The notes beneath the pieces were generated by a model. The model saw only the letters and a list, made by a program, of their open reading frames with translations, did no database searches and was not told where the DNA came from. From IMG/VR virus record IMGVR_UViG_3300036770_007539, positions 1 through 64,000 of that record: a stretch of DNA of 64,000 nucleotides; one strand, given 5' to 3'. Both the position numbers and the translations under genes were made by a program. Of the stretch, positions 5,582-58,777 are shown piece by piece (position 1 is the stretch's first letter; the number at the start of each line of letters is the position of its first letter).

Positions 5582-5606
5582 ACCATCAATTATCTGACAT
5601 AATTGC

Positions 5607-6368
5607 ATGTCATATATATATAGACTTGTCGCAGGACCAGATCCTATTAATGTTTCAGCAAGATTGCCTGCCGGATTTTCGTATACTGGCTTTTGGAGCA
5701 CCTCAAAAACCGAAACTGAAAATTTAATAAATGCACATTTGGAGTTTGTAAGTGATTATATGGGTGGCGGCGCATACCCGTGGTCTGATGAACTTACAGT
5801 TCTTACTACGGACTTATCAAATGTAGAAACGGTTGATGAATACGAAAAATATCGTACTGGACCATATCAGCCTGATTTTGATTCTTCTGAAATTTTTGTA
5901 ATAAAAATTAAGGATCTATCTAAAATTACAAAAGAGCCTTGGGATTTTTGGAAGTACGGTAGGAAATTTTATTTTCATCGAGATGATGATCCACAGACCG
6001 AAGCTAGATTAAAAACATATGAAAAAATAAAAGAACTTTCTTTAAAAGAAGATCTTTCTGAAAACGATATCAATTCACTGAACTTGTCCCTAAGAGAACT
6101 AAGGGCGCTCGAACAACAAAATCTGGATCTTGCAGTTGCTCATCCAGATAAGAATCAAAAAGAAAAATCTTTATATGTGGCAGAAGATAATAAGGAGAAC
6201 AATGATAGGCTTGAGCAGCTAATTAACAGATTAATACAAAATAAAAACAATATCTCAAAAGCTTTTTTGCATGAAAAATTTCAAAAAACGTTATCAGCTG
6301 AAGATATTGAAAAAAAAGCAATTTATTTTTATTTTCTTTGCAAAACGTCCTTCTTAAAAAGATCATGA
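5607..6368 (+). CDS. Hypothetical protein, leaderless-type start, C-terminal helix motif
   Basis: 253-aa ORF; AATTATCTGACAT-N6-ATG with no SD; ends IEKKAIYFYFLCKTS. Confidence 0.7.
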   Translation: MSYIYRLVAGPDPINVSARLPAGFSYTGFWSTSKTETENLINAHLEFVSDYMGGGAYPWSDELTVLTTDLSNVETVDEYEKYRTGPYQPDFDSSEIFVIKIKDLSKITKEPWDFWKYGRKFYFHRDDDPQTEARLKTYEKIKELSLKEDLSENDINSLNLSLRELRALEQQNLDLAVAHPDKNQKEKSLYVAEDNKENNDRLEQLINRLIQNKNNISKAFLHEKFQKTLSAEDIEKKAIYFYFLCKTSFLKRS

Positions 6369-6909
6369 AATTAAATATTGAAGAATTATCCCGTGATAAA
6401 AACAAATCATTAAGCTCTCAGCCAATAATTAAATCCGGCTCCAACAAAGGCTTTAGACAGATTGAGAAAAATGGAAACTGGATCTATTTAGATGGCTATG
6501 ATTACCATTGCCGTCAACAAGAAAAATCCATTCATTTTAATTACGTTAAAACATTAATTAATTTAGGCTTCCGAATCGGATCTTGTGATTTGGATGGCGT
6601 AAAATCTTTTTATATTTTCAAAAGTAAGGAAACAAATCCATGAGCGATAACGAAAAATATTGGCAAGAACGTCGAGCCGATTTACAATTCTGCCTAGATA
6701 ATAATCTAGTTTTTAAAATTACTCATCAAGACTTAGAACAAGAGAACATCTTTCTCAAAGAAGAAAGGCAAAGATTAATTAAAAAATTAGAAGAAATAGA
6801 AAATCTCTCTAAATATGCCTGGGAACAAGTGGATCGCAACCCAGAAGAAGCAAAAGAACTATTTAAAATGATTTTTACAAAAAGCAAATGAACCCAGGAG
6901 AAAATATAC

Positions 6910-7509
6910 ATGACTTGCATTGCCGCATTAGTTGAAAACAATACAGTTTATATGGGAGGCGATTCTGCTGGAATTGCCGGATTATCTATTACCGTTCGCT
7001 CTGATGAAAAAGTTTTTATTAATGGTCCATTTATCATTGGAATTACTGGATCGTTCAGAATGTCCGATCTCCTGAGGTATAAACTCGACCCACCAAAACA
7101 AACCGTTCATCGAGATGATCGAGCTTATCTTGTTACCGATTTTGTTGATAGTCTGAGAAAATGTTTCTCTGCCAATGGTTTTGGAGATAAAGATGCTACC
7201 GTTGGAGGGACTTTCCTCCTAGGATATAAAGGAACACTGTATTCCGTTCAAAAGGATTATCAAATTGGAATTCCCAGCACCCAATATGATGCCGCTGGTT
7301 GCGGAGCAGATTTAGCTCTAGGTTCTCTTCATTCTACAGCTAAACTTAATCTTAAGCCAGAACAGCGCATTACTATGGCTTTAGAAGCTGCTAGTACCTT
7401 TAGCGCAGGAGTTTCTCCGCCATTCTTGGTTATGAAACAAGAATATAAAGATCCGGAAGCACCAAAGAAAAAATCACAGCCTGCCGCCCCAAAGAAAAAG
7501 AAAAAATAA
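6910..7509 (+). CDS. HslV/proteasome beta-type N-terminal threonine protease, paralog 1, Lys-rich tail
   Basis: M-T(1)CIAA...GGDS...DEK(33)VF...GITGS...AGCGA; tail APKKKSQPAAPKKKKK. Confidence 0.8.
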   Translation: MTCIAALVENNTVYMGGDSAGIAGLSITVRSDEKVFINGPFIIGITGSFRMSDLLRYKLDPPKQTVHRDDRAYLVTDFVDSLRKCFSANGFGDKDATVGGTFLLGYKGTLYSVQKDYQIGIPSTQYDAAGCGADLALGSLHSTAKLNLKPEQRITMALEAASTFSAGVSPPFLVMKQEYKDPEAPKKKSQPAAPKKKKK

Positions 7510-7601
7510 ATAATTAACATAACCGCCAATATACATTGCAATTATTTTGCATATACTTACGGCGCAAGAGGTAAGTCAACAGCAAACCCAAAAGGAGCTT
7601 C

Positions 7602-8273
7602 ATGACTGCTATCTCCGGAGTATCGATAAATAACACAGTGTATATCGGCGGTGATTCCGCTGGAATTTCTGGTCTTTCTGTAACAATTCGATCTGATGAA
7701 AAGGTCTTTACAGTTGGACCATTTTTATTTGGAATCGCTGGCAGCTTTAGAATGGGAAACATTCTTCGTTACAAATTCAAAGCTCCCAAACAAAAACCAA
7801 ATCAAACCGATATGGCTTATTTGGTAACTGACTTCGTAGATTGTTTACGTGCATATTTTGCAGCCAATGGATTTGGAGACAAAGATGCTACCATTGGAGG
7901 AAACTTTTTGCTTGGGTACAAAGGCAATCTTTATAACATTGATGCTGATTTTCAAGTAGGAATTCCCAGCACTCAATACGATGCCATTGGTTGCGGAGCA
8001 GAATTAGCATTGGGATCTTTGCATACCACTTCGCAATTTGATATTACCCCAGAGGAAAGACTTCGTTTATCATTGGATGCGGCAAGCAAATTCAATGCAG
8101 GCGTAGCTCCTCCATTTGTTATTCTTTCTCAAAAATACGATCCTAAAAAAGAAAAACTAGAAGCTAAAGCAAAAGCCAAGGCAAAAAGCAAAGAACCCAA
8201 AGCCAAAGCAAAATCCAAAGCTAAAATTGAAGTAACAATGGAAAAACAAGCTTCGGCAAAAAAGAAAAAATAA
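7602..8273 (+). CDS. HslV/proteasome beta-type threonine protease, paralog 2, Lys/Ala-rich tail
   Basis: M-T(1)AISG...GGDS...DEKVF...GIAGS...IGCGA; highly similar to the preceding ORF; tail KAKAKAKAKSKEPKAKAKSKAK...AKKKK. Confidence 0.8.
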   Translation: MTAISGVSINNTVYIGGDSAGISGLSVTIRSDEKVFTVGPFLFGIAGSFRMGNILRYKFKAPKQKPNQTDMAYLVTDFVDCLRAYFAANGFGDKDATIGGNFLLGYKGNLYNIDADFQVGIPSTQYDAIGCGAELALGSLHTTSQFDITPEERLRLSLDAASKFNAGVAPPFVILSQKYDPKKEKLEAKAKAKAKSKEPKAKAKSKAKIEVTMEKQASAKKKK

Positions 8274-8296
8274 TTCGTTCTTAATTAAAAAGATTC

Positions 8297-8331
8297 AGCC
8301 CCTTGACAGGATTTGTTCGAGGGGCTATTCT
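8297..8331 (+). promoter_or_regulatory. Sigma70 promoter overlapping a terminator-like hairpin
   Basis: TTGACA(8303)-N17-TATTCT inside the AGCCCCT...AGGGGCT inverted repeat. Confidence 0.75.
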
Positions 8332-15579: not shown

Positions 15580-16563
15580 TTACCACAAAACTATAACCTT
15601 ACCAACTAACCAATCAAGATATTGCTTAATGTCTTTTTCAACTTCGCCAAATATTTTTACTAATTCTCTTCTTATATTTGGAATGTCTTCATTTCTAGGT
15701 TTTAATGTATAATTAAAACTGTCTTTTTCATATATAGAAAGCTTAGACAAAGCATTATTAGCATACAGAGTAACGCCTTTTAAATTAATATTTTCAAGAG
15801 ATTCCCCAGATTGATTGTACAAAACTAGCAAATCAGAAAGAAAATCAATCAAATTTTCATTTTTTAAATTCATCTCTGACACAGATCCCTTAATTATATT
15901 GCTATTTGCTATTATTGTAGTTAAAATAACAAACGCTGCTCTTTGATAATTATACAAGTAATCATCAAAAGGAACTGTTAAAATTTCTCCAAGATCAGAA
16001 ATTTTCTTTACTTCATAATCATCGTTAATGGCTTTGATAAAATTATCAGCTTTAAATAAATTTTCATATTTATCTAAAATTGCATGACCTAAATCATGAT
16101 CAATTCCTTTAGGTCCCGTTAAATCTGAAGATTCAAATTTGTTTGCAATAATGTTAATTGCATCTGGTTTGAATATATCATTAAAATTTTGTAATAAAAA
16201 TTTACCTTCTTTTACTGTATCTTCTTCAAGTTCTTTCGAGTTTATGATTGATTTAATTTTTTCTTCATACTCTGTAAGAGCGATAGGCTTTCCAGATTTT
16301 AATCCAAATATTTTTTCAGAGTAAATAATTCTATATTTTACGTTTGTATATTGATAATGGCTTTTGAACTCTTCAATTGAAGGAAGGCTCATTATATAAT
16401 CACTTTTTTTTCTACTTCTTCTAGAATCTGTTAATCTAGTTGTATCTGAACCATATTCAGAATAAGGAGTTATAATAACATCATCTAGCGGAGCCGCTCT
16501 TTTGATTAAAAAATCAAAATAATCGACTATACTAGCTATATTTTTAATTTTCTTTGAAGCCAT
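15580..16563 (-). CDS. Hypothetical protein (probable start 16563), N-terminal helix motif, degenerate HDxxH
   Basis: AATATTTTTACAT-N6-ATG; begins MASKKIKNIASIVDYFDFLIKRAA; internal HDLGH. Confidence 0.65.
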   Translation of the reverse strand: MASKKIKNIASIVDYFDFLIKRAAPLDDVIITPYSEYGSDTTRLTDSRRSRKKSDYIMSLPSIEEFKSHYQYTNVKYRIIYSEKIFGLKSGKPIALTEYEEKIKSIINSKELEEDTVKEGKFLLQNFNDIFKPDAINIIANKFESSDLTGPKGIDHDLGHAILDKYENLFKADNFIKAINDDYEVKKISDLGEILTVPFDDYLYNYQRAAFVILTTIIANSNIIKGSVSEMNLKNENLIDFLSDLLVLYNQSGESLENINLKGVTLYANNALSKLSIYEKDSFNYTLKPRNEDIPNIRRELVKIFGEVEKDIKQYLDWLVGKVIVLW

Positions 16564-16607
16564 GCGATTATGTAAAAATATTAGCATCAATATAGAAAGC
16601 AACAATA

Positions 16608-17004: not shown

Positions 17005-17841
17005 TCATCTTTCTAAAGTTGACCTGACGACCCAGAAATCCATTGCATATTGAGTGTTTTTAATAAAGTCGTAAGGCATCCAGAAATAACCTTTCTGCCC
17101 CCAGCTTCTGCCCCAAGAGTTTCTAATTTTAAAAGCCCCTGTGGTAATTTCACCATTTCTATTTCTAAGTTTTCTAGAATCTTCATAACCAACCATGGTT
17201 AAAGCATGACCGCCTTCTGCAATATCTTTGGGTCCAGGTAAACCATAAACTGCACTCTTAGATGTTTCAGGGTCCATTAAATGAGTAAAAGCAATAGCTC
17301 CGAAAGCAATTAAATATCCCGTAGCCAAAGCTGCTTTCATAGTAGTAATGTCGCCATTGTTAATTCTATAATAGTCAACAATTTTATGGAGCTTAGCGTT
17401 ATCATAAACATTTTGAGAAGGTTTAACTAAAAATTTAGTTATGTCATAACCCCAAAATGATTCATCAACTGTCCCAAATGAGTTTAATGATTTGATGGCA
17501 TTTCTCATGGTAGCGCCAGAATCTTGATTAATAGTGCCTTCCATTTCACGAGTTACATAATATTGAAATAATCTTGAAAGGTTTTTGTATCCTTTCTTGA
17601 CGCCAAATCGATTATCGTTATATTCTAGAATGGCTGTAGTAACATGAGCGGTACAAGAGCCAATTGAACCTTGGTCGTCAATTGGAGAACAAAATTTGCT
17701 ATTGTCAATCATGACCGGGGCAGCATGTAAAATATCCGTTGGATTAGTTTTTAAAATAAAATCTCTTTCATCGGGCTGATCAACTTTCCAGCTTTTTAGA
17801 TGCACGGATTTATTTGACCCTAATAAAATATGAGTTGACAT
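17005..17841 (-). CDS. Papain-like cysteine peptidase (C1A family)
   Basis: DQGSIGSCTAH (Gln/Cys), GGHALTMVGY (His), IRNSWGRSWGQKGYFWMPY (Asn). Confidence 0.9.
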   Translation of the reverse strand: MSTHILLGSNKSVHLKSWKVDQPDERDFILKTNPTDILHAAPVMIDNSKFCSPIDDQGSIGSCTAHVTTAILEYNDNRFGVKKGYKNLSRLFQYYVTREMEGTINQDSGATMRNAIKSLNSFGTVDESFWGYDITKFLVKPSQNVYDNAKLHKIVDYYRINNGDITTMKAALATGYLIAFGAIAFTHLMDPETSKSAVYGLPGPKDIAEGGHALTMVGYEDSRKLRNRNGEITTGAFKIRNSWGRSWGQKGYFWMPYDFIKNTQYAMDFWVVRSTLER

Positions 17842-17891
17842 AGTTTGCTCCTATCTTAATGCGATATAGTTGATATATTTAAGGAGGTTTT

Positions 17892-19349
17892 ATGAGCCAC
17901 GTTAACATTCAAATTAATCAATTTTTTAAAGAATTAATCAAATATGGTCTAGGAGAAGAGGTTCATTTTTGGGGTGTCAGCAAAGATTTTGACCCTGAAC
18001 AATTAGAAATCCTCATCTCTAACATAGAGGAAATGGATCGAGTCATGTCGGATCTTAGACCTATTGTTATTAATGCATTAAAACAAATTGCCGAAGATTA
18101 CAAGAAAGAAAAATCTAAATAACTGTCAGACCCTAGAAGAATTAGGGGTTGACAGTATAAAATGACGAGCTAAGCTGTGGCTCAATGACTTCGCATGGAT
18201 CTACGGAAGAAAAATAATTTTGATTAGCTCCAAGGAGGAATTATGGATGATGTTAAATTTAGAGATGCACTAGAGGCAGTTCAAACGCTTGCTAAAATGT
18301 ATGTCGCTAAATCAGCTAATTTTTCGAAATATATAAATACATATCTTGATGAGCCAGTACCAGATAAGAAAAAAATCTTATGGTATAAGGTTGGTCACGA
18401 TAATAAAAATCATTTTTATCTAGGAGTAGACCCCAAAGGCAATATCTTTTTACGAACTTATCCTGAAAAAGGATGGGATATGGAAAAGAAAGAGCCTATT
18501 TATGGCAAGGGTAAAACTACCAAAGTTAAAGATAACGAACTAACTGGAGTATATTTCGGCAGCTGGTAAACAACATATAAAGGAGGAGCGATGAGATTAG
18601 ACAAGTGCCTTGTAGTAGAATCTGTATCTGTGGAAGAATTGAAGAATTCATATTCTACTTGCTCAAAAGCTTTTCCTCAATATGCGATTACTATGCAGTT
18701 TCCTTGCGAATTTATGGAAACTGTAGACAATCCAAGACCTATTGGGTTTCGAGATGCTGAAGAATCAAATCTGCAAAAAGCAGATTGCGGATTCTTATTT
18801 GAGCTTAAAAATTGCAACCATCAAAATTTTAATGTCAAGTTAATTCATTTTAATGGTAAAATTTATATTTTTAAAGGTGTTTACCAATACGCCAACTATG
18901 TTGCTGATCAAGTGGCAAACTTCTTGAATAGCTTAAAAAATTTATCTCCAGATCAAGTTTTTGTATCGGAGCCTTATAAATCTTGGTGTGATGAAGAGTT
19001 TAAAAAAGAAAGTTTAGTTCTTCATAATTATAAAGTTGATAAAGAAGATTTAAACAAACTTGGATTATCTGTTTAGGAGTAAGAAATAGTTATGACAACT
19101 TGGAAAGTTTCTTTTAGTCAGCCTGTTAATATTCATGTCGATGTAGATAATGTGGAAAAGTCACCTTCTAAAGAAAGTATTCTTAAAAAGTTAGAAGAGT
19201 CTAATTTGTCAAGGTATGATAAACTTCGTGCCAAAAATTGTCTGCACAGTTTAACTGTACCATGGATTGTTACGGAGAATTCTCCAGTTTATTTTCATTC
19301 CAGTCATCCTGATCTTGGAAATGTTTCCATTACTGTTAAAAAAGCATGA
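17892..19349 (+). other. Hypothetical ORFs 17892-18122, 18243-18569, 18591-19076, 19092-19349
   Basis: Strong SD sites (AAGGAGG, AGGAG). Confidence 0.7.
18122..18176 (+). promoter_or_regulatory. Sigma70 promoter with hairpin over the -35 element
   Basis: ACTGTCAGACCCTA-gaagaat-TAGGGGTTGACAGT stem; TTGACA(18149)-N16-TAAGCT. Confidence 0.65.
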
Positions 19350-20525: not shown

Positions 20526-20553
20526 TTGACCTGCAATCTTGGATGGCTATGTT
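20526..20553 (+). promoter_or_regulatory. Sigma70-type early promoter
   Basis: TTGACC-N16-TATGTT. Confidence 0.65.
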
Positions 20554-22648: not shown

Positions 22649-22781
22649 CATTTTTGTTAAAAATTTAATGCTAATTAAAATTCAAACAATTAAATTGCAT
22701 ATAATTGATGATTAAAACGATTATATTATTTAGTATTTTGAATTTAGTCAGAGAGTGGGTAATTTATCAAGAAAATCGAGA

Positions 22782-22810
22782 TTGACAAGTAAAAGATCTT
22801 GCACTATGCT
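22782..22810 (+). promoter_or_regulatory. Sigma70-type early promoter
   Basis: TTGACA-N17-TATGCT. Confidence 0.8.
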
Positions 22811-28941: not shown

Positions 28942-30018
28942 AGCATATAAATATGAAATTATCCAATGATGACGAGTTAATTTCTAACATCTTTTTAACT
29001 ATCTTATTTTTTCTTGGAACTATAATCCTGTTAAAAATAGGTTTTATTTATTGGATTATTTGTTGTTCTATTGTTTATTTTTTCATAGTTTCTGACAATA
29101 AATTTATAAATTTCATCTCCCCTGCAGAAGAATTTCAAGATAATAGTTATTACATTTTGCTTTGGTTTTTGGCATTATTAATGCCAATTGCATTGTTTTT
29201 AATGTATATTTCTGCTCGAGCCAGTGGTTATAGTAAAGATAACCATGATTAATTTGCCAGAAGTAGGGGAAAAAATCGTAGTCAATAATATTAGATATGC
29301 AACCGCCATGGTTTCCGATGTCGTTTGGGATGAAAAACAATTTGATTTTGTAATTAATTTACAATGGACAAATACTAATGGCGAATATATAGGTACATCT
29401 AGAGTCTACTATCGAGATCAAAATAAATCTTGGTTCAGATTCTCCAACAACAATTAACAAATAATTAGGTGAAATATGAGCGAATCTTGTGTCAAAAAAG
29501 TAAAAAATGCATGGCATCGAGCTAGGAACTTTAATAAAAAGAAAAGTGCAGATGGCGTAGTAACAAAATCAAATAGCCCAGGAATGACTTTGAAAAAATG
29601 GGCAAAGCACCAGGTTGAGACCGGCAGCTCTTTAGCAGAAGAATGTAGCCAATGGCTAAAGAATAAAAAAACACTAGCTCAAAAGTCACGAACTAAGAAA
29701 TGAATTATATTTTAATATTGTTAGTCCTTATTTTTTTACTAGCATTTATGCTTTTGAAAATGATTAGGTCTGAACAATTTGTTAAATCTTATTGCTTGAA
29801 TATTTTTCAACAAAGGCAGAAAGTATTTTTACAAGAATTTAAGTCTCATTATAAAATATATGGCTCTGAAAATTCTAACAAAAAACAAGCCATGATTGAA
29901 GTTTTACAAGATTATCTGTGGTCTAAGTCCCAAGATTTGGACCGCAATATCTCCAATAAAGTTTTTAACTTAGATTTAATTCTTGATATTGCCCATATTG
30001 TTTGGTTAATTTATTTTA

Positions 30019-30507: not shown

Positions 30508-30535
30508 TTGACACCTATAAGATCGTAGCTATGTT
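30508..30535 (+). promoter_or_regulatory. Sigma70 promoter for the sigma-factor gene
   Basis: TTGACA-N16-TATGTT; GCTATGTTGCTTCA is also found in the 20526 promoter. Confidence 0.7.
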
Positions 30536-30580: not shown

Positions 30581-31378
30581 ATGTCTACGTATCTTGATAA
30601 GATCAAAAACTGCGAGATTCTTTCCAATGATAAGCTTGTTGCTCTGTTTGCCCAATATTCTTTGACGGGTGACATTCAAGCTCGAAATAAAATCATCAAC
30701 TCTACGCTTAGGCTCGTTGTAAAAATTGCAAGCCAGTATAAGCATTATGGAAAGTTTGACGATCTCATCCAAGAAGGTAACTGTGGTCTTTTGAAGGCTA
30801 TTGACAAGTTTGATTTTACCCTTGGAGTTCCCTGGAGTAACTATTCTGCTCAGTGGATTCGAGCTTATATTCTTCGCTTCACATTTAACAATCAAACCAT
30901 GGTAAAGCGAGGAACCTCTCCCGAGGAGAGAAAGTATTACTGGAAACTTCTTCGACTGCGGTCGAAGCTGGAAGCCCAGGGCAAAGACGCCAATGCCGAG
31001 GCTTTGGCTACCGAAATGAACCTAACCAAAGAACAGGTTGAGTTCATTCTTAGCAGGTCTACGGTCGATTCTAGTCTTCAATCAATCTCCTGCAACAGTT
31101 TCGATGAAGATCCTTCTGAGGAAATTCTAGACCCCATCTCTTCAAACGCAGAAGATAATATTGTCGATGCTATGTCTAATTCTCTAATCGAAGAAAAAAT
31201 GAATCTATTTGCTGATAGCCTTACCCCTCAGAAGAGGCTAGTATTTATGAATCGCTTTATGTCTGATGAATACCAAACTTTTGCTCAGCTAGGCGAGCAA
31301 CTAGGAGTCACACGTCAGCGTGTCCAGCAAATTGAATCAGAGCTTAAGAAGCAATTTATTTCTAAAATCAAAATTTGA
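30581..31378 (+). CDS. RpoH/sigma32-like sigma factor
   Basis: LRLVVKIA, DDLIQEGNCGLLKAIDKFD, WIRAYILRF, degenerate RpoH box (GTSPEERKYYWKL), region 4.2 LGEQLGVTRQRVQQIE. Confidence 0.9.
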   Translation: MSTYLDKIKNCEILSNDKLVALFAQYSLTGDIQARNKIINSTLRLVVKIASQYKHYGKFDDLIQEGNCGLLKAIDKFDFTLGVPWSNYSAQWIRAYILRFTFNNQTMVKRGTSPEERKYYWKLLRLRSKLEAQGKDANAEALATEMNLTKEQVEFILSRSTVDSSLQSISCNSFDEDPSEEILDPISSNAEDNIVDAMSNSLIEEKMNLFADSLTPQKRLVFMNRFMSDEYQTFAQLGEQLGVTRQRVQQIESELKKQFISKIKI

Positions 31379-31650: not shown

Positions 31651-31773
31651 TTTATTTCACTAACGTTCATAAAGTTATCGGGAAAATTTTTTTTCAATTT
31701 AAAAAATGTAGGCGACTATGCTACAAAATTAATATTCATTCTGTTTTTTAAACTATTTTTTTTGCATATAGTT

Positions 31774-32091: not shown

Positions 32092-32351
32092 TGAATAATT
32101 CTTGGTTAAATTATGGCTGGATTGATGATGATGAAGACGTAGAGAATATTCAAACCGCCGATACTTTACGACCAGAAGATTTAGAAAGATTATTAAAAGA
32201 AAAATCCAAAGATCCAAAAGAAGATGGAATTAATTGCAAAATTTGCAAAGATTGGTTTCATCTATCTGAACCCAACGAATCTGATGGAACATTTATTTGC
32301 AGAGAATGTCGAATAAGACCTTGGAGAAATTCTCCAATTAATAATGATTAA
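32088..32351 (+). CDS. Small zinc-ribbon protein
   Basis: CKIC...FICRECR, similar to the C-terminus of 20085-20504. Confidence 0.65.
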   Translation: MMNNSWLNYGWIDDDEDVENIQTADTLRPEDLERLLKEKSKDPKEDGINCKICKDWFHLSEPNESDGTFICRECRIRPWRNSPINND

Positions 32352-32371
32352 TTTGATATAGATATTGAAAT

Positions 32372-33287: not shown

Positions 33288-33417
33288 TCCTATGTTCGTC
33301 GCTTACACGCCTAATGATATACGTTATATATGCTTATATTCTTTGTGCAGTATCAAAAATAGTAAAAATATGTAAGTTGATGTATTACAAAAAAAGCATA
33401 TAATTTAGCATATGAAT

Positions 33418-39041: not shown

Positions 39042-39052
39042 CATCACTATTT

Positions 39053-39125
39053 GTCGTTTTAGCTCAGCTAGCAGAGCACCTCATTGGTAATGAGGAGGTC
39101 ATGGGTGCAACTCCCATAAACGGCT
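39053..39125 (+). tRNA. tRNA-Thr (anticodon GGT), non-canonical D and T loops
   Basis: GTCGTTT/AAACGGC acceptor stem, CCTCA-TTGGTAA-TGAGG, T loop TGCAACT, D loop AGCTAGCA. Confidence 0.85.
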
Positions 39126-39877
39126 CAAAGTTCTAGTTCTTCTTCTAGTTTCATTAAAACTAGCCTAGACATTCCAAGATTGCTTTTTTCTTTGTCTAGA
39201 ACGACATAGATAAATAGATTATCTTGTTTTAATACGAAGGTAACTATGTGATAGTTGTTATTTAAGTTAATAACAATATCTTCAATTTTATCTTTAATGT
39301 TTAAGTTAGTTAAGAACTTCTTGTGAGATTTAACTACTTCAACCATGTAAGCGCAATATAATTCAAATTCAGAGGATTTATCTGAGTTTTGAATTATAGG
39401 CATTCCAGTTGTTATGTCTACAATGGAAGCGGCTAGTACGCCATCAAGCTCCATAATGGTGTTAAATTTTTCTTTTATGCTTTTAAAATAAGAAGAGCTT
39501 GGTTTTCTTGATGTAGAGCCTGATGAAGATTGTTCAGCTTCTGGCTCTAAGGCATAATTTTTAATTTTTCCCTCATCTAACAAGACGTAATATTCTAGAA
39601 TAAGTTCGGTCCATAATTTGTTAATTGACTCTACTTCTGGTAAAACATTGGGAGAAACTTTAAAAGTTCCATCCTCCCAAGTTAACATTTCATAAAAAGC
39701 ATCAATTCCAAAATTATTGGTAGTGGTAGCGTGAAGAACTCTTCCAGTAGAAACCCAAACTTCACCAGAAAATTTCTTATGAGTTATAGTTATATGAGCA
39801 GATGCTTGACTTAGTATGTAGAATTGAATTATATCTACCAGTGTCTCGGTAGAAATCTCGCCTTGAAATTTATTCAT
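39125..39877 (-). CDS. DUF4388 (PatA_N-like) domain fused to a roadblock/LC7-like domain
   Basis: FQGEI...LVDIIQ...GEVWVSTGRVLHA...AFYEMLTWEDGTF; C-terminal LDGVLAASIVDITTGM...IEDIVI...LFIYVVLDKEKSNLGMSRL. Confidence 0.8.
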   Translation of the reverse strand: MNKFQGEISTETLVDIIQFYILSQASAHITITHKKFSGEVWVSTGRVLHATTTNNFGIDAFYEMLTWEDGTFKVSPNVLPEVESINKLWTELILEYYVLLDEGKIKNYALEPEAEQSSSGSTSRKPSSSYFKSIKEKFNTIMELDGVLAASIVDITTGMPIIQNSDKSSEFELYCAYMVEVVKSHKKFLTNLNIKDKIEDIVINLNNNYHIVTFVLKQDNLFIYVVLDKEKSNLGMSRLVLMKLEEELEL

Positions 39878-40316
39878 TTTAGCCTTGTTAAGAGTGATTT
39901 CCGCAACTTACTCTTACTATAATATGTAATTTTATTCGGAGAAATTTATGAACAATAATTATCAAATCGTTAAAAATGAAGTAGTTAATGCATACTCTGA
40001 TTGCAATGAAATCAGTAATTCTTCAAGAAACTTAGATTTTTTAGCCTCTAGACCTGTTTCGGTAAAAGAAGCTGAGGAAATTATGTCTCTTGCCGTTGAA
40101 GGGGGGTATAATAATTTTTCATCAGAGCTAATTTCCTTGCTCCCTCAAGATGCTAAAGTTTGGATTGCAAGAGAAGGGAGCGTCTGTGTTTACTTAGATA
40201 AACCATTAGATGAAGAAGCTTTAAGCGAATTAGGATGCGATGAATACGATCAGGTATCATCGGACAATGATACCGCTTGTGGAAATTACCGAATCTGGTG
40301 GGATTGAGGAGCAAAT

Positions 40317-41030: not shown

Positions 41031-41548
41031 ATATGACAGAAGATAAAAAGAAAGAATTTTTGTCACAAGTAAAATCGAAGGCATTGTTAGCAGTTTGGAG
41101 TTTACCAAACAAGCCTACAAAACCAGAGCCACCATCACCATTTCAAGAATTTCACTGTTCATTAGATGAATTAATAAATAAATTCATTGAAGAAAATGAT
41201 TTTGCAGAGATTAAAAATGGAAAATTCCTCCATGCAGAAGAATTCTTCTTATGGTTAAGCAAGCTAGCAGCTTCTGATAAGTTAGTCTTAAGATGTTTTA
41301 ATGATCCAGGTCAAAATCAAGTAGAGGATTGCGACCTTTACATGAATATGGATTCATCTCAATTTGCTTTTCAGCAGACAGAATATGAAAAAAATCTTTT
41401 AAAATACGAAAAAGATTTATCTGAATACGATGAAAAGTGCTTAACAATTATTGATGAAAATATTAATAATTTGCAAAAACATATTAATTCTATGCTTGAG
41501 GCTAAAGAAGCTTTATTAAAAAAATAAAGAATAATTTCACATGATTAT

Positions 41549-42567: not shown

Positions 42568-42615
42568 GTTTCTCCTAATATTTTTTCATATTAATTGAAC
42601 TAGTCTGGCTTAACT

Positions 42616-43365
42616 ATGAAAAAATTAATTATCTTTGATTTGGACGGCACACTTGCCGAATCTAAATCTCCTATAACTAAATCTATGAGCATTGCTCTAA
42701 AGAAATTACTGCAAAATTATTCAGTTGCAATAATTTCAGGTGGAGCATTTCTTCAATTTGAAAAGCAATTTTTAAATAATTTATCTGTACCCGAAGATTT
42801 ATTATATAATTTATACTTGTTTCCCACTTGCGCCACATCATTCTTTAAATTTAAAGACAAACAATGGCAAAAAGTTTATTCTGAAGAGCTTTCAATTGAA
42901 GAAAAAGAAAAAATACTACAATCTTTTAAATTTACTTTTGAAAAAGTAGGTTTTGAAATTCCTAAAAAATTACTTTATGGAAACATTATTGAAGATCGAG
43001 GAACTCAAATTACTTTTTCTGCTCTAGGGCAAGATGCCCCTGTAGATCTTAAAAAGACTTGGGATCCATCGCATTTAAAAAGATTAAAGATGATTGAAAT
43101 ATTACAAGAGTATTTGCCTGATTTTGAAATTAGATCGGGCGGCTCAACTTCTATTGATATTACTAAAAAAGGAATCGATAAAGCTTATGGAATTGCTAAA
43201 ATTCAAGAATATTTAAAATTTTCTATTGACGAGATGCTCTTTATAGGTGATGCTATATTTCCAGGCGGCAATGATTATGCTGTAGTTTCAACGGGGGTGG
43301 AGTGCATTTCAACTCCAAGCCCAGAAGAAACGCAATTCATAATTTTAGAGCTATTAAAGAATTGA
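42616..43365 (+). CDS. HAD-IIB phosphomannomutase-like protein
   Basis: FDLDGTL, ISGG, IEDRGTQITFS, GGSTSIDIT..GIDK, FIGDAIFPGGND. Confidence 0.85.
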   Translation: MKKLIIFDLDGTLAESKSPITKSMSIALKKLLQNYSVAIISGGAFLQFEKQFLNNLSVPEDLLYNLYLFPTCATSFFKFKDKQWQKVYSEELSIEEKEKILQSFKFTFEKVGFEIPKKLLYGNIIEDRGTQITFSALGQDAPVDLKKTWDPSHLKRLKMIEILQEYLPDFEIRSGGSTSIDITKKGIDKAYGIAKIQEYLKFSIDEMLFIGDAIFPGGNDYAVVSTGVECISTPSPEETQFIILELLKN

Positions 43366-48649: not shown

Positions 48650-49210
48650 ATGTGGAATACCTGGTTCTTCTTTTTTTTACTATTCAATCCTGAGCCGCCT
48701 GCTACTTCAATTTTGGATTTAATTAATCCAATCCCTTTAGAGGGGTCTTGTAAAGGGTCTGCCATTATTGAATGGCAAGGAGACTCTAAAAAAGAGTCTA
48801 TTCAAATTGTTAACGAAACATGCAATAATGCAGTTTTAAATTTTAAAAAGTTTTTAGATTATAAAAAAATTTCTTATGATGAAAATTTAAATTTATCAGT
48901 AAATATATCCGTTTTAGATTCTGGATTTAAAAATAAAGCGTTAAACGATCCTAAAAGATTTACAAATGGTATTGTTCCAAGGGATAGTGAAGGATATGTT
49001 TTAATTGCACATGGCTATTATAGCTTAAAATTAAAGCAGATTTTTATATTTAATAAAATATTTATCAATAATAAGTCTAATAAATTTTTTAAAAACGCAT
49101 TATCTCATGAAGTATTTCATGCTTTAATACATCAAAATAATATTAAACTTCCCTCTGAGCAAGAGGAAGTTTTAGCTATTCAATTTTCTAAATTTTTAGG
49201 ATTGTGGTAA
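48650..49210 (+). CDS. HExxH metallopeptidase-like protein with hydrophobic N-terminus
   Basis: GYY...IFI...LSHEVFHAL...EEVLA. Confidence 0.6.
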   Translation: MWNTWFFFFLLFNPEPPATSILDLINPIPLEGSCKGSAIIEWQGDSKKESIQIVNETCNNAVLNFKKFLDYKKISYDENLNLSVNISVLDSGFKNKALNDPKRFTNGIVPRDSEGYVLIAHGYYSLKLKQIFIFNKIFINNKSNKFFKNALSHEVFHALIHQNNIKLPSEQEEVLAIQFSKFLGLW

Positions 49211-49648
49211 AGAGGATTTTAATAAATACAATCTCTCTTCAGAAGAATTTGCCTGCGCTGCAAGCAAATCATCTATACCCAAAGATAATTTATCTTCTTC
49301 ATCCAACACAGTTCTTAACTTTTTAGAAAGTTTTAAGAAAGATTCCTCTGCTCGAACTGCATTTTTAAAACAATTAATTGGAATAGAAGCATCTAATTTG
49401 ACATTTTCTGAGATGTGATTTATAATTTCACATTGCTTTTCAAAGCTTACTAATTTAGTATCAAATACTCCTATAATTTTTTCTGCGGTAGCATCTACGT
49501 CTTCTACTATTCCTTCATACAGTCTTTGAAATAGCAAATGGTCTTGATAAAATGAAAGACCAGCGCATTGCCAATGACAATTCTGATACATCAGATATAG
49601 AAATCTTAGGTGCCCTAAATACCATGGTAATAATTTTTCACTATTCAT
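49196..49648 (-). CDS. Dps/ferritin-like protein
   Basis: HWQCAGLSFYQDHLLFQRLYE...D..AEK; CATAATTGAACAT-N6-ATG. Confidence 0.8.
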   Translation of the reverse strand: MNSEKLLPWYLGHLRFLYLMYQNCHWQCAGLSFYQDHLLFQRLYEGIVEDVDATAEKIIGVFDTKLVSFEKQCEIINHISENVKLDASIPINCFKNAVRAEESFLKLSKKLRTVLDEEDKLSLGIDDLLAAQANSSEERLYLLKSSLPQS

Positions 49649-49664
49649 ACTAAAATGTTCAATT

Positions 49665-50411
49665 ATGGATAAAACGCTAAATATAAAATTAGATCTGGAC
49701 GTTAAATTGTTGTGTGTTAGCGATATACACGAGCATCCAGACCAATTTTTTGAAATTGTTAATAAATTTCCAATCTCAGAAAAAATGAGATTAGTTGTTT
49801 GTGGTGATATTTTTGATAAAGGATATGGCTTTTCTGCAGCAGAAAAAATTATTAATAAATTAAAATATCACATGGATCTAGGTCAAGCCTACTTTATTAA
49901 AGGCAATCATGAGCTAAAAAATATTAAAAAAAGCAGACAGGCTGGTTCACTATCTCCATTAATGAAATGGGTAGATAATCAGCCTATTTCTTTGTCTTTT
50001 ATTTATAATAATTCATCTAGATATACCGTTGTTCATGGGGGAGTTGATGGTTATATGGGATGGGATGATTTAGTTTATGATCTGAGCGTTTGTTATATTC
50101 GATACTTATCTAATAGTCATAAAAAAATGATACCCATTAAAAAAGAGCAAAAAGATGGACTTATTGTCTATACTCCAAAAGATCCGGAAAATTCTTTGTG
50201 GCATGAAGTATATGATGGTAGATTTGGTTATATTATTTCAGGTCATAATAGCAATCCTTCTGGTCCAAATTTTTATAAATATTCTTGTAATATTGATACG
50301 GGAGTATTTGACTCTGGCAAATTAACAGCTGCAATCTTTTCTTCTAAAGGGCGAGAAGAAATTTATCAAGCAATAGGGAAGGCTTATAAAGATGAGCAAG
50401 TTATTACCTGA
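49665..50411 (+). CDS. Calcineurin-like metallophosphoesterase
   Basis: SDIH, GDIFDKG, GNHE, VHGG, SGH, IDTG. Confidence 0.9.
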   Translation: MDKTLNIKLDLDVKLLCVSDIHEHPDQFFEIVNKFPISEKMRLVVCGDIFDKGYGFSAAEKIINKLKYHMDLGQAYFIKGNHELKNIKKSRQAGSLSPLMKWVDNQPISLSFIYNNSSRYTVVHGGVDGYMGWDDLVYDLSVCYIRYLSNSHKKMIPIKKEQKDGLIVYTPKDPENSLWHEVYDGRFGYIISGHNSNPSGPNFYKYSCNIDTGVFDSGKLTAAIFSSKGREEIYQAIGKAYKDEQVIT

Positions 50412-52696: not shown

Positions 52697-53059
52697 ATGA
52701 TGAGTCTTTCAAAAGAAAAGTTAATTAAATTTAAAGAGTTTTTTATGATTGAGCATGAAAAAATTGTAAAGAATTCGGCAGCAAGATCTTTGGACGAAAC
52801 AGACGTTGGAGGAGATGAAGCCGATATAGTTTCTTTAGGTCAAATTAAAAATTTGGCTGAATCTCTTTCTGCAAGAGATAAGGCTGCGCTTAATCGCATT
52901 GAAAACTCTCTAATAAAGATTGCTAAAGGTACTTTTGGTCAATGTGAAGAATGCGAAGAGCTTATTTCGGAAGCAAGATTAAAAGCAATTCCTGATTGTT
53001 CTTTTTGCATTTCTTGTGCAGAGCAATATGAATTAAATGTAAAAAGGGGAATGGCTTGA
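52697..53059 (+). CDS. dksA: DksA/TraR C4 zinc-finger protein
   Basis: GDEADI coiled-coil tip, IENSL.KI..GTFGQCEEC.E.I...RLKAIP....CISC. Confidence 0.85.
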   Translation: MMSLSKEKLIKFKEFFMIEHEKIVKNSAARSLDETDVGGDEADIVSLGQIKNLAESLSARDKAALNRIENSLIKIAKGTFGQCEECEELISEARLKAIPDCSFCISCAEQYELNVKRGMA

Positions 53060-53073: not shown

Positions 53074-53670
53074 ATGGACGATGAATTTCAATTGGGACCT
53101 CATAGGTTAGACGCTGAAATATATAAAAATTTATTTGAAAGCCGTTCAATTTTCCTATTAGGAGATATTCACGTTCAATCCGCTGCTAATCTAGCGGCTC
53201 AATTGTTATGGCTCAATGCAATCAAGCAAGATGAGATTACTGTTTATATCAATTCTCAAGGAGGTGATATTGATAGTGGTCTTTTTACAATTTACGATAC
53301 TATTCAATGGATAACCTCTCCAGTATCTACCGTTTGTATTGGAGAGGCTTATTCTAGTGCAGGCTACATATTAGCCTCTGGTTCTAGAGGAAAGAGATAC
53401 GCCTATCCTCATTCTAAAATTATGATTCATGGGGTACAAACTTCTGAGCTATCTGGAACTCAAGAGGAAATTGAGGCTGAAAGCAAAAGAATAAAATTAT
53501 TAAATCAATCTTTAATGGAAGTGATGGCAAGGCATTCAAAGCAATCTTTTTCCAAAGTTAAAAGAGATTTTAAAAAAGATAAATATTTTACAGCAGAAGA
53601 AGCTTTAAAATACGGTCTAATTGATGAAGTTATTGAGCCTACAAAAAAGATTCCACCTCTAAAAAGATAG
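53074..53670 (+). CDS. clpP: ATP-dependent Clp protease proteolytic subunit
   Basis: YINSQGG, CIGEAYSSA (Ser), IMIH (His), KDKYFTAEEALKYGLID (Asp). Confidence 0.9.
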   Translation: MDDEFQLGPHRLDAEIYKNLFESRSIFLLGDIHVQSAANLAAQLLWLNAIKQDEITVYINSQGGDIDSGLFTIYDTIQWITSPVSTVCIGEAYSSAGYILASGSRGKRYAYPHSKIMIHGVQTSELSGTQEEIEAESKRIKLLNQSLMEVMARHSKQSFSKVKRDFKKDKYFTAEEALKYGLIDEVIEPTKKIPPLKR

Positions 53671-53689
53671 AATATTTTGCTATAATGAC

Positions 53690-57129: not shown

Positions 57130-57559
57130 AAAATTTTGATTTAAATGAATTATTAAGTTCTTCTATGAAGAACATGGCTGCTAATTATAAAACAGAGGCT
57201 CCAACTTGGTTTATGCCAGGTCAGCTTTCTTTTAATGCATCAGAAAGCTTATCTCTTTTTCATTGTTTAGAATCTCAGATGATTCAGTTTGCCATTTTTC
57301 ATGGAAAAACTGTGCATAGATTTTATATTTATTTACCAGAAGATAAATACGAATTATCTAATTTAGATGACGTAGTTAAAGTTATTAATGCTGAAGAAAA
57401 ATCTTTGAAGCTTGTATATAGAGGAGAATCTTGTTTATTGTTCATCTCCCAAGATAATATGTTATTTTTTGATTCAAATCTAGATAAAATTGAAGTAGCT
57501 TCTTTTACTGGTACAAAATTAGCCTCTTTAAAAAACAATTTAAAATCTTTGAGTAAAAA

Positions 57560-58390
57560 ATGAGTAAGTGGAGACCTTCCGACAATTGCATTTATGTCAT
57601 ACCAGACATTCACGGCGCCGTTGATTTGTTAGAAAAGTGTTTAGTTAGAATTTTGCCACTAAGAAATAAGAATGGAAAAAAAGATAAAATAATTTTTTTA
57701 GGAGATTATATAGACCGGCACGAAGATTCTTGCTTGGTTATTGATGTTTTAATTGAATTAAAGAAAAAATACCCAGACCAAGTAATATGTTTAAAGGGAA
57801 ATCATGAACATATGCTATTGATGGGTTTAGAAATGTATCCTAATTATTTACCATTTGAATACTCTTCACAGTGGAAGATGTGGCTGCATAATGGTGGTGA
57901 CGATACTCTTAGAGGATATTTAAAAAATAATAAAAACAATTTAATGTTATCAAGTGTAAATTCTCTGGCAGTTAGAAAATTTAATATTATTCCTGATGAG
58001 CACTTAGAGTTTATGATGAACTGTCTTGATTTTTATGAAACAGAAAACTTTTCTTTTATTCATGGAGGTGGAAATCCGCAACTGCCATGGAGCAAGCACT
58101 CTCCGGAAGTTATTTATTGGGACAGGAAACTTTTTGAATTCGTTAAGCATTCAATGGCGTATAACGAGCCTGTCCCATGGAATAAAACTATAATAACCGG
58201 TCATAATGGACCGGTTCCACTATTTCATGATAAATTTATGATGCTTGATGCGGGAAGCCCTAAAAGACTTTTAATTTTAGAAGCTAATTCAAGGGAAGCA
58301 TTTATAGCAGAAAATGACAAATCAAAATTATTAAAATTTTCTACTTCCAATAGCATTGTAAAAAGAAGCCCTTTTCGCAGAAACTCTTAG
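57560..58390 (+). CDS. Ser/Thr protein phosphatase-like metallophosphoesterase
   Basis: PDIHG, GDYIDR, GNHE, WLHNGG, IHGG, TGH, LDAG. Confidence 0.9.
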   Translation: MSKWRPSDNCIYVIPDIHGAVDLLEKCLVRILPLRNKNGKKDKIIFLGDYIDRHEDSCLVIDVLIELKKKYPDQVICLKGNHEHMLLMGLEMYPNYLPFEYSSQWKMWLHNGGDDTLRGYLKNNKNNLMLSSVNSLAVRKFNIIPDEHLEFMMNCLDFYETENFSFIHGGGNPQLPWSKHSPEVIYWDRKLFEFVKHSMAYNEPVPWNKTIITGHNGPVPLFHDKFMMLDAGSPKRLLILEANSREAFIAENDKSKLLKFSTSNSIVKRSPFRRNS

Positions 58391-58753
58391 GTCTTTTACT
58401 ACTGAGGGATAAAGATCGGCAAGCTCTTCAAATAATTTCCATTGCTTCTTAAGTAAAATATAGCAAGAATAGTAAGAGTTTTGAGCTAAAGCATTGTAAT
58501 ATTTGTCTTCAGCTCCTTTTAGATGCCCAGGCATATAAACTTGGCAAAATAAAATCCAATCTCCCAATGATTGATATAAATGAAAATTATAATTATTTTG
58601 AGCTTCAATATATTTTAAAGTTAAACTATTATTAGAATAATTTTCTAGTTTGTTAGAATTTATTAATAGATTTAATAGATAAGAATTCAACTCATTGCTA
58701 TAAGCAAGTTTGTCGATCGTTGGCTTGAAATATTTCATTAATATTTCATCCAT
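58331..58753 (-). CDS. Hypothetical helical protein
   Basis: YQSLGDWILF...YY...Y...LFEELAD pattern; exact start uncertain. Confidence 0.55.
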   Translation of the reverse strand: MDEILMKYFKPTIDKLAYSNELNSYLLNLLINSNKLENYSNNSLTLKYIEAQNNYNFHLYQSLGDWILFCQVYMPGHLKGAEDKYYNALAQNSYYSCYILLKKQWKLFEELADLYPSVVKDLRVSAKRASFYNAIGSRKF

Positions 58754-58777
58754 ATAATAATATAGGAAAAAATTCAT

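What the first reader, a model, noticed from the sequence alone, without database searches (positions are those of the whole stretch)
5588..58774. Dispersed phage-specific promoter motif AATWWTTTNRCAT-N6-start defining a leaderless, probably late, regulon
Seen: a 13-bp motif ends exactly 6 nt before the start codon of seven genes with no obvious SD. These are 5588 AATTATCTGACAT (ATG 5607), minus 16582-16570 AATATTTTTACAT (16563), 31755 ATTTTTTTTGCAT (31774), 33399 TATAATTTAGCAT (33418), 41530 AATAATTTCACAT (GTG 41549), minus 49667-49655 CATAATTGAACAT (49648) and 53671 AATATTTTGCTAT (53690). The motif also precedes genes with short leaders: 7540 (second HslV), minus 17871 (papain), minus 39936 (DUF4388-roadblock), and more weakly minus 33342, 28963 and 58774. 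It marks most of the reverse-oriented singleton genes, and no -35 box accompanies it. Inference: a single-element promoter read by a phage-encoded sigma factor or RNAP (analogous to T4 gp55 late promoters), often starting transcription on the start codon.
Basis: partly seen in the sequence, partly recalled or inferred. Interest (0 to 1): 0.85.

Follow-up and report, generated by a model that had tools for sequence, protein, structure and literature searches.

The report
Phage promoter fixed to start codons
A short conserved DNA signal in an uncultured 301-kb phage and its relatives sits a fixed six bases before the start codon of many genes, so it is most likely a phage-specific promoter that makes messenger RNAs with no leader.

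Summary
All 13 listed sites exist; 28963 and 58774 are on the minus strand. The motif is not over-represented genome-wide, but it is concentrated in intergenic DNA: 12 hits against 3.2 expected, with 0 of 300 shuffles reaching 12. It always points at the downstream gene. It is conserved upstream of orthologous genes in related phages whose proteins are only 30-56% identical. A long ORF starts exactly 6 nt after the 13-mer in 6 window hits and 18 hits in relatives; every other offset has 4 or fewer. The six bases themselves drift. The refined motif is bAATWWTTTnR(C/T)ATa at -20 to -6, with a pyrimidine at -1, a purine at +1 and no -35 box.

Best reading: a single-element promoter that starts transcription 7 nt after (C/T)AT. 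That gives leaderless mRNAs, mRNAs with 2-4 nt leaders, or mRNAs that begin at the Shine-Dalgarno sequence. The window encodes a full-length sigma factor (30581-31378) behind a host-type TTGACA-N16-TATGTT promoter, which makes it a plausible reader of the motif.

"Late" is unsupported. The driven genes are accessory: proteases, NUDIX, a Dps-like protein and tRNA-Ser. The next 30 kb, a replication module, has only one site. The main rival puts the start at the A of CAT, giving an 8-nt leader. No RNA data were available to decide between the two.

The parts
5588..5600 (+). Motif AATTATCTGACAT; N6 then ATG 5607 (253-aa gene 5607-6368)
   Evidence: The gene is a variable cassette, absent from the 93%-identical relative L018 and replaced by other genes in the relative L019, so no orthologue test was possible. 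Extended-matrix score 16.2.
7540..7552 (+). Motif AATTATTTTGCAT; predicted start 7559; 43-nt leader with SD before HslV-like gene 7602-8273
   Evidence: Top hit of both matrices. Kept as AATATATTTGCAT in L019 while the flanks differ.
16570..16582 (-). Motif AATATTTTTACAT; N6 then ATG 16563 (327-aa gene 15580-16563)
   Evidence: Orthologues L015 and L016 keep motif, N6 and ATG with different N6 letters. Orthologue lengths of 324-329 aa support this start.
17859..17871 (-). Motif AACTATATCGCAT; N6 then AGGAG (SD) of papain-like peptidase 17005-17841
   Evidence: L015 has AATTTTTTTGCAT, N6, then AGGAG. Peptidase_C1 assignment comes from the orthologue.
22688..22700 (+). Motif AATTAAATTGCAT in the 212-nt gap before 22861
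   Evidence: score 16.1. No orthologue data.
28951..28963 (-). Weak motif GATAATTTCATAT; start codon 9 nt downstream (gene 28537-28941)
   Evidence: It overlaps the first codons of the divergent gene 28953, so its conservation is confounded by coding.
31755..31767 (+). Motif ATTTTTTTTGCAT; N6 then ATG 31774 (105-aa lipoprotein-like gene)
   Evidence: Four of four orthologues keep motif, N6 and ATG. For L007 this holds only if the ATG 6 nt upstream of the called start is used.
32347..32359 (+). Motif variant ATTAATTTGATAT 12 nt before tRNA-Ser (32372-32460)
   Evidence: Kept in L006 and L008. A tRNA gene needs a promoter but no translation signal.
33399..33411 (+). Motif TATAATTTAGCAT; N6 then ATG 33418 (106-aa gene)
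   Evidence: Four of four orthologues keep motif, N6 and ATG. The N6 letters are atgaat, atcatt, actatt and atagat.
33319..33331 (-). Motif variant ending TAT; N6 then the conserved leader AGG(C/T)G of trypsin-like gene 32460-33287
Evidence: The same arrangement occurs in L006 and L008.
39924..39936 (-). Motif AATAAAATTACAT before DUF4388 gene 39125-39877 (40-nt leader)
   Evidence: Kept in L013 as AATAAATTGGCAT; L007 has a weaker version.
41530..41542 (+). Motif AATAATTTCACAT; N6 then GTG 41549, with ATG at 41552 (NUDIX gene)
   Evidence: L013 has AATAATATCACAT, N6, then AGG ATG. The leader is therefore 0 or 3 nt.
42577..42589 (+). Motif AATATTTTTTCAT, 26 nt before gene 42616-43365
   Evidence: The L013 orthologue also has a motif upstream, at a different distance.
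49655..49667 (-). Motif CATAATTGAACAT; N6 then ATG 49648 (Dps/ferritin-like gene 49196-49648)
   Evidence: L003 and L013 keep motif, N6 and ATG; the N6 letters are tttagt, tatagt and cctgat.
53671..53683 (+). Motif AATATTTTGCTAT; N6 then ATG 53690 (549-aa gene)
   Evidence: Kept in L003, L004 and L005. Also kept in L031, whose protein is 30% identical and whose start codon is GTG. The protein N-terminus is conserved from residue 1.
58762..58774 (-). Motif AATTTTTTCCTAT; ATG 58753 lies 8 nt downstream (N6 in L003)
   Evidence: The orthologue length of 141 aa supports the start at 58753.
30581..31378 (+). Phage sigma-70-family sigma factor (265 aa), candidate reader of the motif
   Evidence: Pfam r2 and r4, with weak r3. 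RpoH/RpoS/RpoD-like but below NCBIfam cut-offs. Aligns to SigA residues 104-354. Conserved in L006-L008.
30508..30535 (+). Host-type promoter TTGACA-N16-TATGTT in front of the sigma gene
   Evidence: The same architecture sits before the sigma gene in L006-L008.

Best explanation
The motif is a promoter specific to this phage clade. It is a single element of about 15 bp, bAATWWTTTnR(C/T)ATa, with no -35 partner. Transcription most likely starts at the purine 7 nt after the (C/T)AT. In about half of the cases that purine is the A or G of the start codon, so the mRNA is leaderless. In others the RNA begins 2-4 nt before the AUG, directly at the Shine-Dalgarno sequence, or at a longer leader or a tRNA precursor. 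The likely reader is host core RNA polymerase carrying the phage sigma factor encoded at 30581-31378. That gene sits behind a host-type promoter, which suggests an early-to-next-class cascade. What is shown: conservation of the motif, fixed spacing to the start codon, orientation toward genes, concentration in intergenic DNA, and the presence of the sigma gene. What is inferred: the transcription start position, which sigma reads the motif, and the timing.
For: (1) Hits are concentrated in intergenic DNA: 12 against 3.2, with 0 of 300 shuffles reaching 12. Eight of the top ten genome-wide hits are intergenic, although intergenic DNA is only 4.8% of the window.
(2) There is a phylogenetic footprint. 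Mean identity between orthologous sites is 78% in the motif, 62% in the N6 and 55% in the 20 nt upstream.
(3) ORF starts pile up at offset 6: 6 in the window and 18 in 234 kb of relatives, against 0-4 at every other offset from 0 to 30. Offsets below 6 stay at chance level, so there is a hard lower bound with the mode sitting on it. Independent gene families also show this in L014, L020 and L032.
(4) Position -1 is a pyrimidine in 14.5 of 15 weighted families and +1 is a purine in 13 of 15. This includes leadered genes.
(5) In leadered genes the N6 boundary coincides with the first base of the SD (papain-like gene in the window and L015) or with the start of a conserved leader (trypsin-like gene in three phages).
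(6) The motif precedes tRNA-Ser in three phages, which argues against a purely translational signal.
(7) Five to seven of nine reverse-oriented genes, each of which needs its own promoter, carry the motif.
(8) A second, distinct promoter class also exists. TTGACA-N16-18-TAnnnT occurs 29 times against 9.3 expected, with 8 in intergenic DNA, one of them before the sigma gene.
(9) The geometry matches the single-element promoter tAATGTAtA read by phiEco32 gp36, where transcription starts 6-8 bp downstream (PMC8948821).
Against: No RNA 5' ends were available, so the start site is inferred. If transcription starts at the ATG, the -12 to -7 hexamer is T-n-R-C-A-T and position -11 is not conserved. 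That is unusual for a sigma factor with an intact region 2. The upstream half AATWWT looks more like a canonical -10 element, with A at its second position and T at its sixth. The motif is not enriched genome-wide. It is nearly absent from the next 30 kb of the same genome. The sigma factor keeps region 4, yet no -35 element was found. My own simple de novo motif finder did not recover the motif from all upstream regions.
Confidence: 0.6

Rival explanations
1. It is the same promoter, but AATWWT is the -10 hexamer and transcription starts at the A of (C/T)AT. The N6 genes then have a constant 8-nt leader with no SD and are not leaderless.
For: AATWWT has A at its second position and T at its sixth in about 13 of 15 families, as sigma-70-family -10 elements do. 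CAT is the classical bacterial start-site triplet (my own knowledge). In the phage sigma, the residues aligned with those that read -12 in primary sigmas are changed (IRAYILR against IRQAITR). That fits an A instead of a T at the first hexamer position. The generic scan pairs the TATAAT at 33399 with a weak -35.
Against: It does not explain why the start codon sits exactly 8 nt from the RNA end in ten or more gene families, with no shorter spacings. It does not explain the pyrimidine at the last N6 position. The most conserved positions, C/T-A-T, would lie at the start site rather than in the -10 region. Short SD-less leaders are generally poor substrates for translation (my own knowledge).
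Confidence: 0.2
2. The motif is read by host RNA polymerase with a host sigma factor (housekeeping or alternative), not by the phage sigma. It is therefore not a phage-specific regulon.
For: Nothing here links the phage sigma to the motif except that both are present. The host is unknown. Variants such as TGATATAGT before the tRNAs and TGCTATAAT at 53671 resemble extended -10 promoters.
Against: The clear host-type promoters in the same genome have a different architecture, TTGACA-N16-18-TAnnnT. The L013 site, with N6 cctgat, has no -10-like hexamer after CAT. If TATAAT-like N6 sequences were the -10 element, transcription would start inside ORFs whose N-termini are conserved from residue 1.
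Confidence: 0.12
3. The motif acts in the mRNA as an SD-independent ribosome-loading signal at a fixed distance from the AUG, perhaps used by ribosomes carrying the phage bS21.
For: The spacing to the start codon is fixed. The N6 genes have no SD. The motif is U/A-rich. The phage encodes bS21 at 60753-61088 and a trigger factor.
Against: The motif also precedes tRNA-Ser and genes with their own strong SD at variable distances. Reverse-oriented genes with intergenic gaps of 16-50 nt still need a promoter exactly there.
Confidence: 0.05
4. It is chance similarity of AT-rich intergenic DNA, plus shared ancestry of orthologous regions.
For: There is no genome-wide excess of hits, and the strict consensus is only marginally enriched.
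Against: Intergenic shuffles never reach the observed count. The offset-6 peak appears in independent gene families and in phages down to 30% protein identity. The motif is better conserved than its flanks.
Confidence: 0.03

Closest known systems
phiEco32 gp36-dependent middle/late promoters (tAATGTAtA)
   Same: A single conserved element without a -35 box. It is read by host core polymerase with a phage-encoded sigma-70-family factor. Transcription starts 6-8 bp downstream (PMC8948821). The core TG(T/C)ATA is shared, and some sites here read AATGTATA.
   Different: gp36 lacks region 4, whereas the sigma here has it. The element here extends further upstream (AATWW). No leaderless arrangement is reported for phiEco32 in that paper. 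The link between sigma and promoter is untested here.
Thermus phage phiYS40 middle/late transcripts
   Same: A large phage whose post-early transcripts mostly lack a leader, made from promoters placed directly before the start codon (review PMC3594737).
   Different: phiYS40 uses the host holoenzyme, and it shifts host IF2/IF3 levels rather than encoding a sigma (the review, plus my own knowledge). Its host phylum is already rich in leaderless genes. Here only a subset of genes is affected and the host is unknown.
-10 element adjacent to the ORF in Deinococcus-Thermus and Actinobacteria (TANNNT a few nt before ATG)
   Same: A promoter element at a fixed short distance from the start codon, giving leaderless mRNA (PMC12340547, PMC4007540).
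   Different: The hexamer at the equivalent position here is T-n-R-C-A-T, not TANNNT. The motif is longer and specific to this phage clade.
T4 late promoters (gp55, TATAAATA)
   Same: A -10-region-only promoter read with a phage-encoded specificity factor (my own knowledge).
   Different: The sequence differs. gp55 is a minimal region-2-only protein that depends on the sliding clamp and gp33. T4 late mRNAs have leaders with an SD.
Lambda cI mRNA from PRM
   Same: A leaderless phage mRNA whose 5' end is the AUG (PMC10491246 abstract).
   Different: It is a single gene expressed from a host sigma-70 promoter, not a motif-defined set of genes.

Membership tests
Phage sigma-dependent single-element promoter (phiEco32 gp36 type) | One conserved element near -10 with no conserved -35 element | tested here: met
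   In the information profile of 15 site families, the signal is confined to -20 to -6, plus -1 and +1. Positions -40 to -25 carry 0.42 bit or less.
Phage sigma-dependent single-element promoter (phiEco32 gp36 type) | A phage-encoded sigma-70-family factor is present | tested here: met
   Gene 30581-31378 has Sigma70 r2 and r4 and aligns to SigA. Orthologues are present in L006-L008.
Phage sigma-dependent single-element promoter (phiEco32 gp36 type) | The phage sigma holoenzyme initiates at these sites, 6-8 bp downstream of the element | not testable with these tools
   This needs in vitro transcription or 5'-end mapping.
Phage sigma-dependent single-element promoter (phiEco32 gp36 type) | The sigma lacks region 4, which explains the missing -35 element | tested here: not met
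   Region 4 is present at 40 bits. The helix-turn-helix aligns with SigA, but with VTRQRVQQ in place of VTRERIRQ.
Leaderless mRNA genes | The transcription start coincides with the first base of the start codon | not testable with these tools
   There are no RNA data. The proxies are met: a fixed offset of 6, a pyrimidine at -1 and no SD in the N6.
Leaderless mRNA genes | The annotated ATG is the true start codon | tested here: met
   The N-terminus of the 549-aa family is conserved from M1. Orthologue lengths fit for the 327-aa, 105-aa and 106-aa genes. The start at 41549 or 41552 is ambiguous.
Host housekeeping sigma-70 promoter (-35 TTGACA / -10 TATAAT) | A -35 hexamer lies 16-18 bp upstream of the -10 hexamer | tested here: not met
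   No -35 signal is seen at motif sites. A separate class with TTGACA-N16-18-TAnnnT exists elsewhere in the window.
T4-type late promoter | TATAAATA at -10 | tested here: not met
   The consensus is AATWWTTTnR(C/T)ATa.
T4-type late promoter | It precedes late (structural or lysis) genes | tested here: not met
   The driven genes are peptidases, NUDIX, a Dps-like protein, DUF4388, a tRNA and unknowns. No structural gene was recognised among the proteins I annotated in the 94 kb read, which were mainly the larger ones.
Bacteroidota promoter (-33 TTTG / -7 TAnnTTTG) | TAnnTTTG together with an upstream TTTG, in a genome without SD sequences | tested here: not met
   Positions -17 to -10 partly resemble TAnnTTTG, but G is nearly absent around -33. 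AGGAG is the strongest positional signal before genes, and TTGACA-type promoters are present.
Jumbo-phage multisubunit RNAP late promoters (AR9 AACA-N6-TW, phiKZ TATG) | The consensus sequence, plus phage beta/beta'-like polymerase genes | tested here: inconclusive
   The consensus does not match. Among the larger window proteins scanned there were no polymerase-like Pfam hits, although several have no hit at all. About 207 kb of the genome was not read.

The most novel reading that the evidence does not exclude
This phage clade may carry a self-contained expression system. Its own sigma factor would read a promoter that is hard-wired to the start codon. The resulting leaderless or minimal-leader mRNAs would then be translated preferentially because the phage also supplies ribosome-associated proteins (bS21 at 60753-61088 and a trigger factor at contig 76.7-78.0 kb). 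Under the rival start site, the same components would point to a so far undescribed initiation mode that needs an exact 8-nt leader.
Probability: 0.12. Interest if true: 0.8.

Novelty: new variant of a known kind. Interest (0 to 1): 0.55.

Why it matters
If the start site is confirmed, this gives a promoter rule for an uncultured clade of freshwater jumbo phages. The rule would allow transcription units and true start codons to be annotated from sequence alone. Gene callers mis-set several of these starts: 16563, 31774, 33418 and 58753. It would also show a phage sigma regulon in which promoter geometry enforces leaderless translation. That would be a compact way to express independently acquired accessory genes, including swappable cassettes such as 5607-6368. 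It offers a testable link between phage-encoded sigma factors and phage-encoded ribosomal proteins.

Tried and rejected
(1) Reading the first N6 bases as the -10 hexamer (CATAAT or TATAGT), with transcription starting inside the ORF. Rejected because the 549-aa family is conserved from M1, the 105-aa protein needs its N-terminal lipoprotein signal, and L013 has N6 = cctgat.

(2) A Bacteroidota host and a -7/-33 promoter, suggested by the bS21 phage paper PMC9723584. Rejected because of the SD signal, the TTGACA promoters and the different genomic context of bS21.

(3) Megablast and tblastn against cultured phages found no close relative.

(4) Rfam found only the three tRNAs.

(5) My own ZOOPS-EM motif finder, run on -40 to -1 of all genes, converged on purine-rich/SD signals or on composition, not on the motif.

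(6) The generic promoter and terminator scans were close to shuffle expectation and did not define transcription units.

(7) The site before 24165 (offset 9) lies inside a coding region and its spacing is not kept in L008, so I discarded it.

(8) The ESM Atlas gave no usable lead for the 549-aa protein.

(9) I walked the contig to 93.6 kb looking for structural genes. It yielded a replication module only.
Full report
WHAT THE WINDOW IS

The window is the first 64 kb of the 301-kb contig IMGVR_UViG_3300036770_007539. It has 33% G+C, uses the standard genetic code and carries three tRNAs. It has no close cultured relative. The gene content is that of a jumbo phage. It includes a UvrD-like helicase, topoisomerase, RNA ligase, a PurA-like enzyme, an FtsK-like ATPase, ClpP, a DksA/TraR-like protein and bS21. 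The next 30 kb encodes a primase zinc ribbon, SbcCD-like proteins, a dNMP kinase, a trigger factor and DnaE.

THE OBSERVATION

All 13 sites exist; 28963 and 58774 are on the minus strand. The strict consensus is only weakly enriched, with 4 matches against 1.2 expected.

To avoid circularity I built a 13-column weight matrix only from sites found in related phages and scanned the window with it. The total number of hits is not above shuffle expectation (33 against 41.6). The hits are concentrated in the 5% of the window that is intergenic: 12 against 3.2, and 6 against 0.5 at a higher cut-off, with 0 of 300 shuffles reaching either value.

The decisive statistic is the spacing to the next ORF start. 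I took every hit, regardless of annotation, and recorded where an ORF of at least 80 aa begins. Offset 6 has 6 cases in the window and 18 cases in 234 kb of related phages. Each other offset from 0 to 30 has 0-4 cases, and offsets below 6 stay at chance level.

RELATED PHAGES

Homologues of three window proteins led to syntenic contigs. The results by gene are:

- 549-aa gene: all four close orthologues have AATATTTTGC(C/T)AT, then 6 nt, then ATG. A relative with only 30% protein identity has AATAATTCTGCAT, then 6 nt, then GTG.
- 106-aa and 105-aa genes: four of four orthologues keep the motif and the six-base spacing, while the six bases differ.
- 327-aa gene: three of four orthologues do so.
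- Dps-like gene: three of three do so, with N6 = tttagt, tatagt and cctgat.
- Independent cases occur before other genes in L014, L020 and L032.

Across orthologous sets, the motif is 78% identical, the N6 62% and the upstream 20 nt 55%.

Some spacings differ: N8 for 58753(-), which is N6 in L003; N9 for the NUDIX ATG in both the window and L013; and N7 in L032.

ANATOMY OF THE MOTIF

An information profile over 15 site families shows signal from -20 to -6: not-A, A, A, T, W, W, T, T, T, n, R, C/T, A, T, A. Position -1 is a pyrimidine in 14.5 of 15 families and +1 is a purine in 13 of 15. There is no -35-like element.

In leadered genes the N6 boundary is again meaningful. It is followed directly by AGGAG in the papain-like gene of two phages. 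In the trypsin-like gene of three phages it is followed by the conserved leader AGG(C/T)G.

The motif, in a GATAT variant, also precedes tRNA-Ser in three phages. Five of the nine reverse-oriented genes carry it clearly, and two more carry it weakly.

A SECOND PROMOTER CLASS AND THE SIGMA FACTOR

TTGACA-N16-18-TAnnnT occurs 29 times against 9.3 expected. Eight of these are in intergenic DNA. One sits before the gene at 30581-31378, and the same arrangement holds in three relatives.

That gene encodes a 265-aa sigma-70-family protein with regions 2, 3 (weak) and 4. It aligns with B. subtilis SigA residues 104-354. It differs at positions that, in primary sigmas, contact -12 and the -35 hexamer (the residue roles are from my own knowledge).

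A host-type promoter driving a phage sigma, together with a distinct promoter class, is the classic layout of a temporal cascade. The link between this sigma and this motif remains an inference.

MECHANISM

The start codon cannot lie upstream of the RNA 5' end. A distribution with a hard lower bound at offset 6, and its mode on that bound, is what leaderless transcription predicts. The pyrimidine/purine step at that junction, and the SD or conserved leader beginning exactly there, point the same way. The geometry also matches phiEco32 gp36 promoters, which have a single element tAATGTAtA and start transcription 6-8 bp downstream (PMC8948821).

The main rival reads AATWWT as the -10 hexamer and the A of CAT as the start. 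That fits canonical sigma chemistry better, with A at the second hexamer position and T at the sixth. It leaves the exact 8-nt leader unexplained. I put leaderless at about 0.6 and the rival at about 0.2.

A purely translational signal is unlikely because of the tRNA sites and the SD-bearing genes.

WHAT IS NOT SUPPORTED

"Late" is not supported. The genes behind the motif are peptidases (HslV-like, papain-like and trypsin-like), NUDIX, a Dps-like protein, DUF4388, a small lipoprotein-like protein, tRNA-Ser and several unknowns.

One of these genes, 5607-6368, is a cassette missing from the 93%-identical relative L018 and replaced by other genes in L019.

In the unseen 64-93.6 kb of the same contig there is one intergenic site, which is leadered (about contig position 85.8 kb), and no N6 case. 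So the motif marks accessory, often independently oriented genes. It does not mark the replication module. Structural genes were out of reach.

Absence of an SD is also not distinctive, since only 39 of 121 genes have an SD core.

COMPARISON AND NOVELTY

The closest known systems are single-element promoters read by phage sigma factors (phiEco32), leaderless middle/late transcripts of phiYS40 (PMC3594737), and -10 elements adjacent to ORFs in leaderless-rich bacteria (PMC12340547).

This case combines those features with a new consensus, in an uncultured clade that also encodes bS21 and a trigger factor. I rate it a new variant of a known kind and moderately interesting. The key claim, the position of the transcription start, awaits RNA data.

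Noticed in passing
window 2529-2557, 8303-8331, 18149-18176, 20526-20553, 22782-22810, 30508-30535, 34855-34882: There is a clear host-type promoter class, TTGACA-N16/17-TAnnnT. It often continues as TATGTTGCTTCA (at 20545 and 30527, and also in L006). These are probably the early promoters.
   Followed up: partly
window 34855-34892: The host-type -10 hexamer TATTGT ends 7 nt before ATG 34890 of the 738-aa GHKL-ATPase gene, which could make it another leaderless mRNA. In L007 the equivalent ATG opens only a short upstream ORF.
   Followed up: no
window 33799-34827: A short (342-aa) adenylosuccinate-synthetase-like gene. The PurA models score best but below their cut-offs. The PurZ model scores 106 bits against a cut-off of 300, so this is not evidence for a 2-aminoadenine genome.
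   Followed up: partly
window 60753-61088; contig 76753-77994 (L036 13206-14447): The phage encodes ribosomal protein bS21, and further along the contig a trigger factor. There is also a DksA/TraR-like zinc finger (52697-53059), ClpP (53074-53670) and two HslV-like genes (6910-7509 and 7602-8273).
   Followed up: partly
window 5582-6365: Gene 5607-6368, together with its motif, is a swappable cassette. L018 (93% identical flanks) lacks it, and L019 has two other genes in its place.
   Followed up: partly
window 38998-39046: A long conserved inverted repeat (CACTTGCAaAAAGTAAT ... gTTACTTTCTGCAAGTG) lies just upstream of tRNA-Thr. It is kept in L006 and L013.
   Followed up: no
window 31583-31603: An isolated G+C-rich hairpin (GCGCGGGGGCGGGCGCGC) sits in an otherwise AT-rich 390-nt gap between the sigma gene and the 31755 promoter. 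It may be a terminator or a processing site.
   Followed up: no
window 28941/28953, 49648/49665, 58753/58778, 42567/42616: These divergent gene pairs are separated by only 11-48 nt. In three pairs (28941/28953, 49648/49665, 42567/42616) the start codon of one gene, read as CAT on the other strand, forms part of the motif or of a motif-like run.
   Followed up: partly
window 1046-2443 (-): A 465-aa protein is similar to the C-terminal part of the myxobacterial gliding protein GltG and to the AgmX/PglI C-terminal domain. This may be a hint about the host or a surface function. No motif lies upstream.
   Followed up: no
L007 1-707 and 17742-18365: A related phage carries a TnpB/Cas12f-like gene and a serine resolvase at positions where the window has neither.
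   Followed up: no
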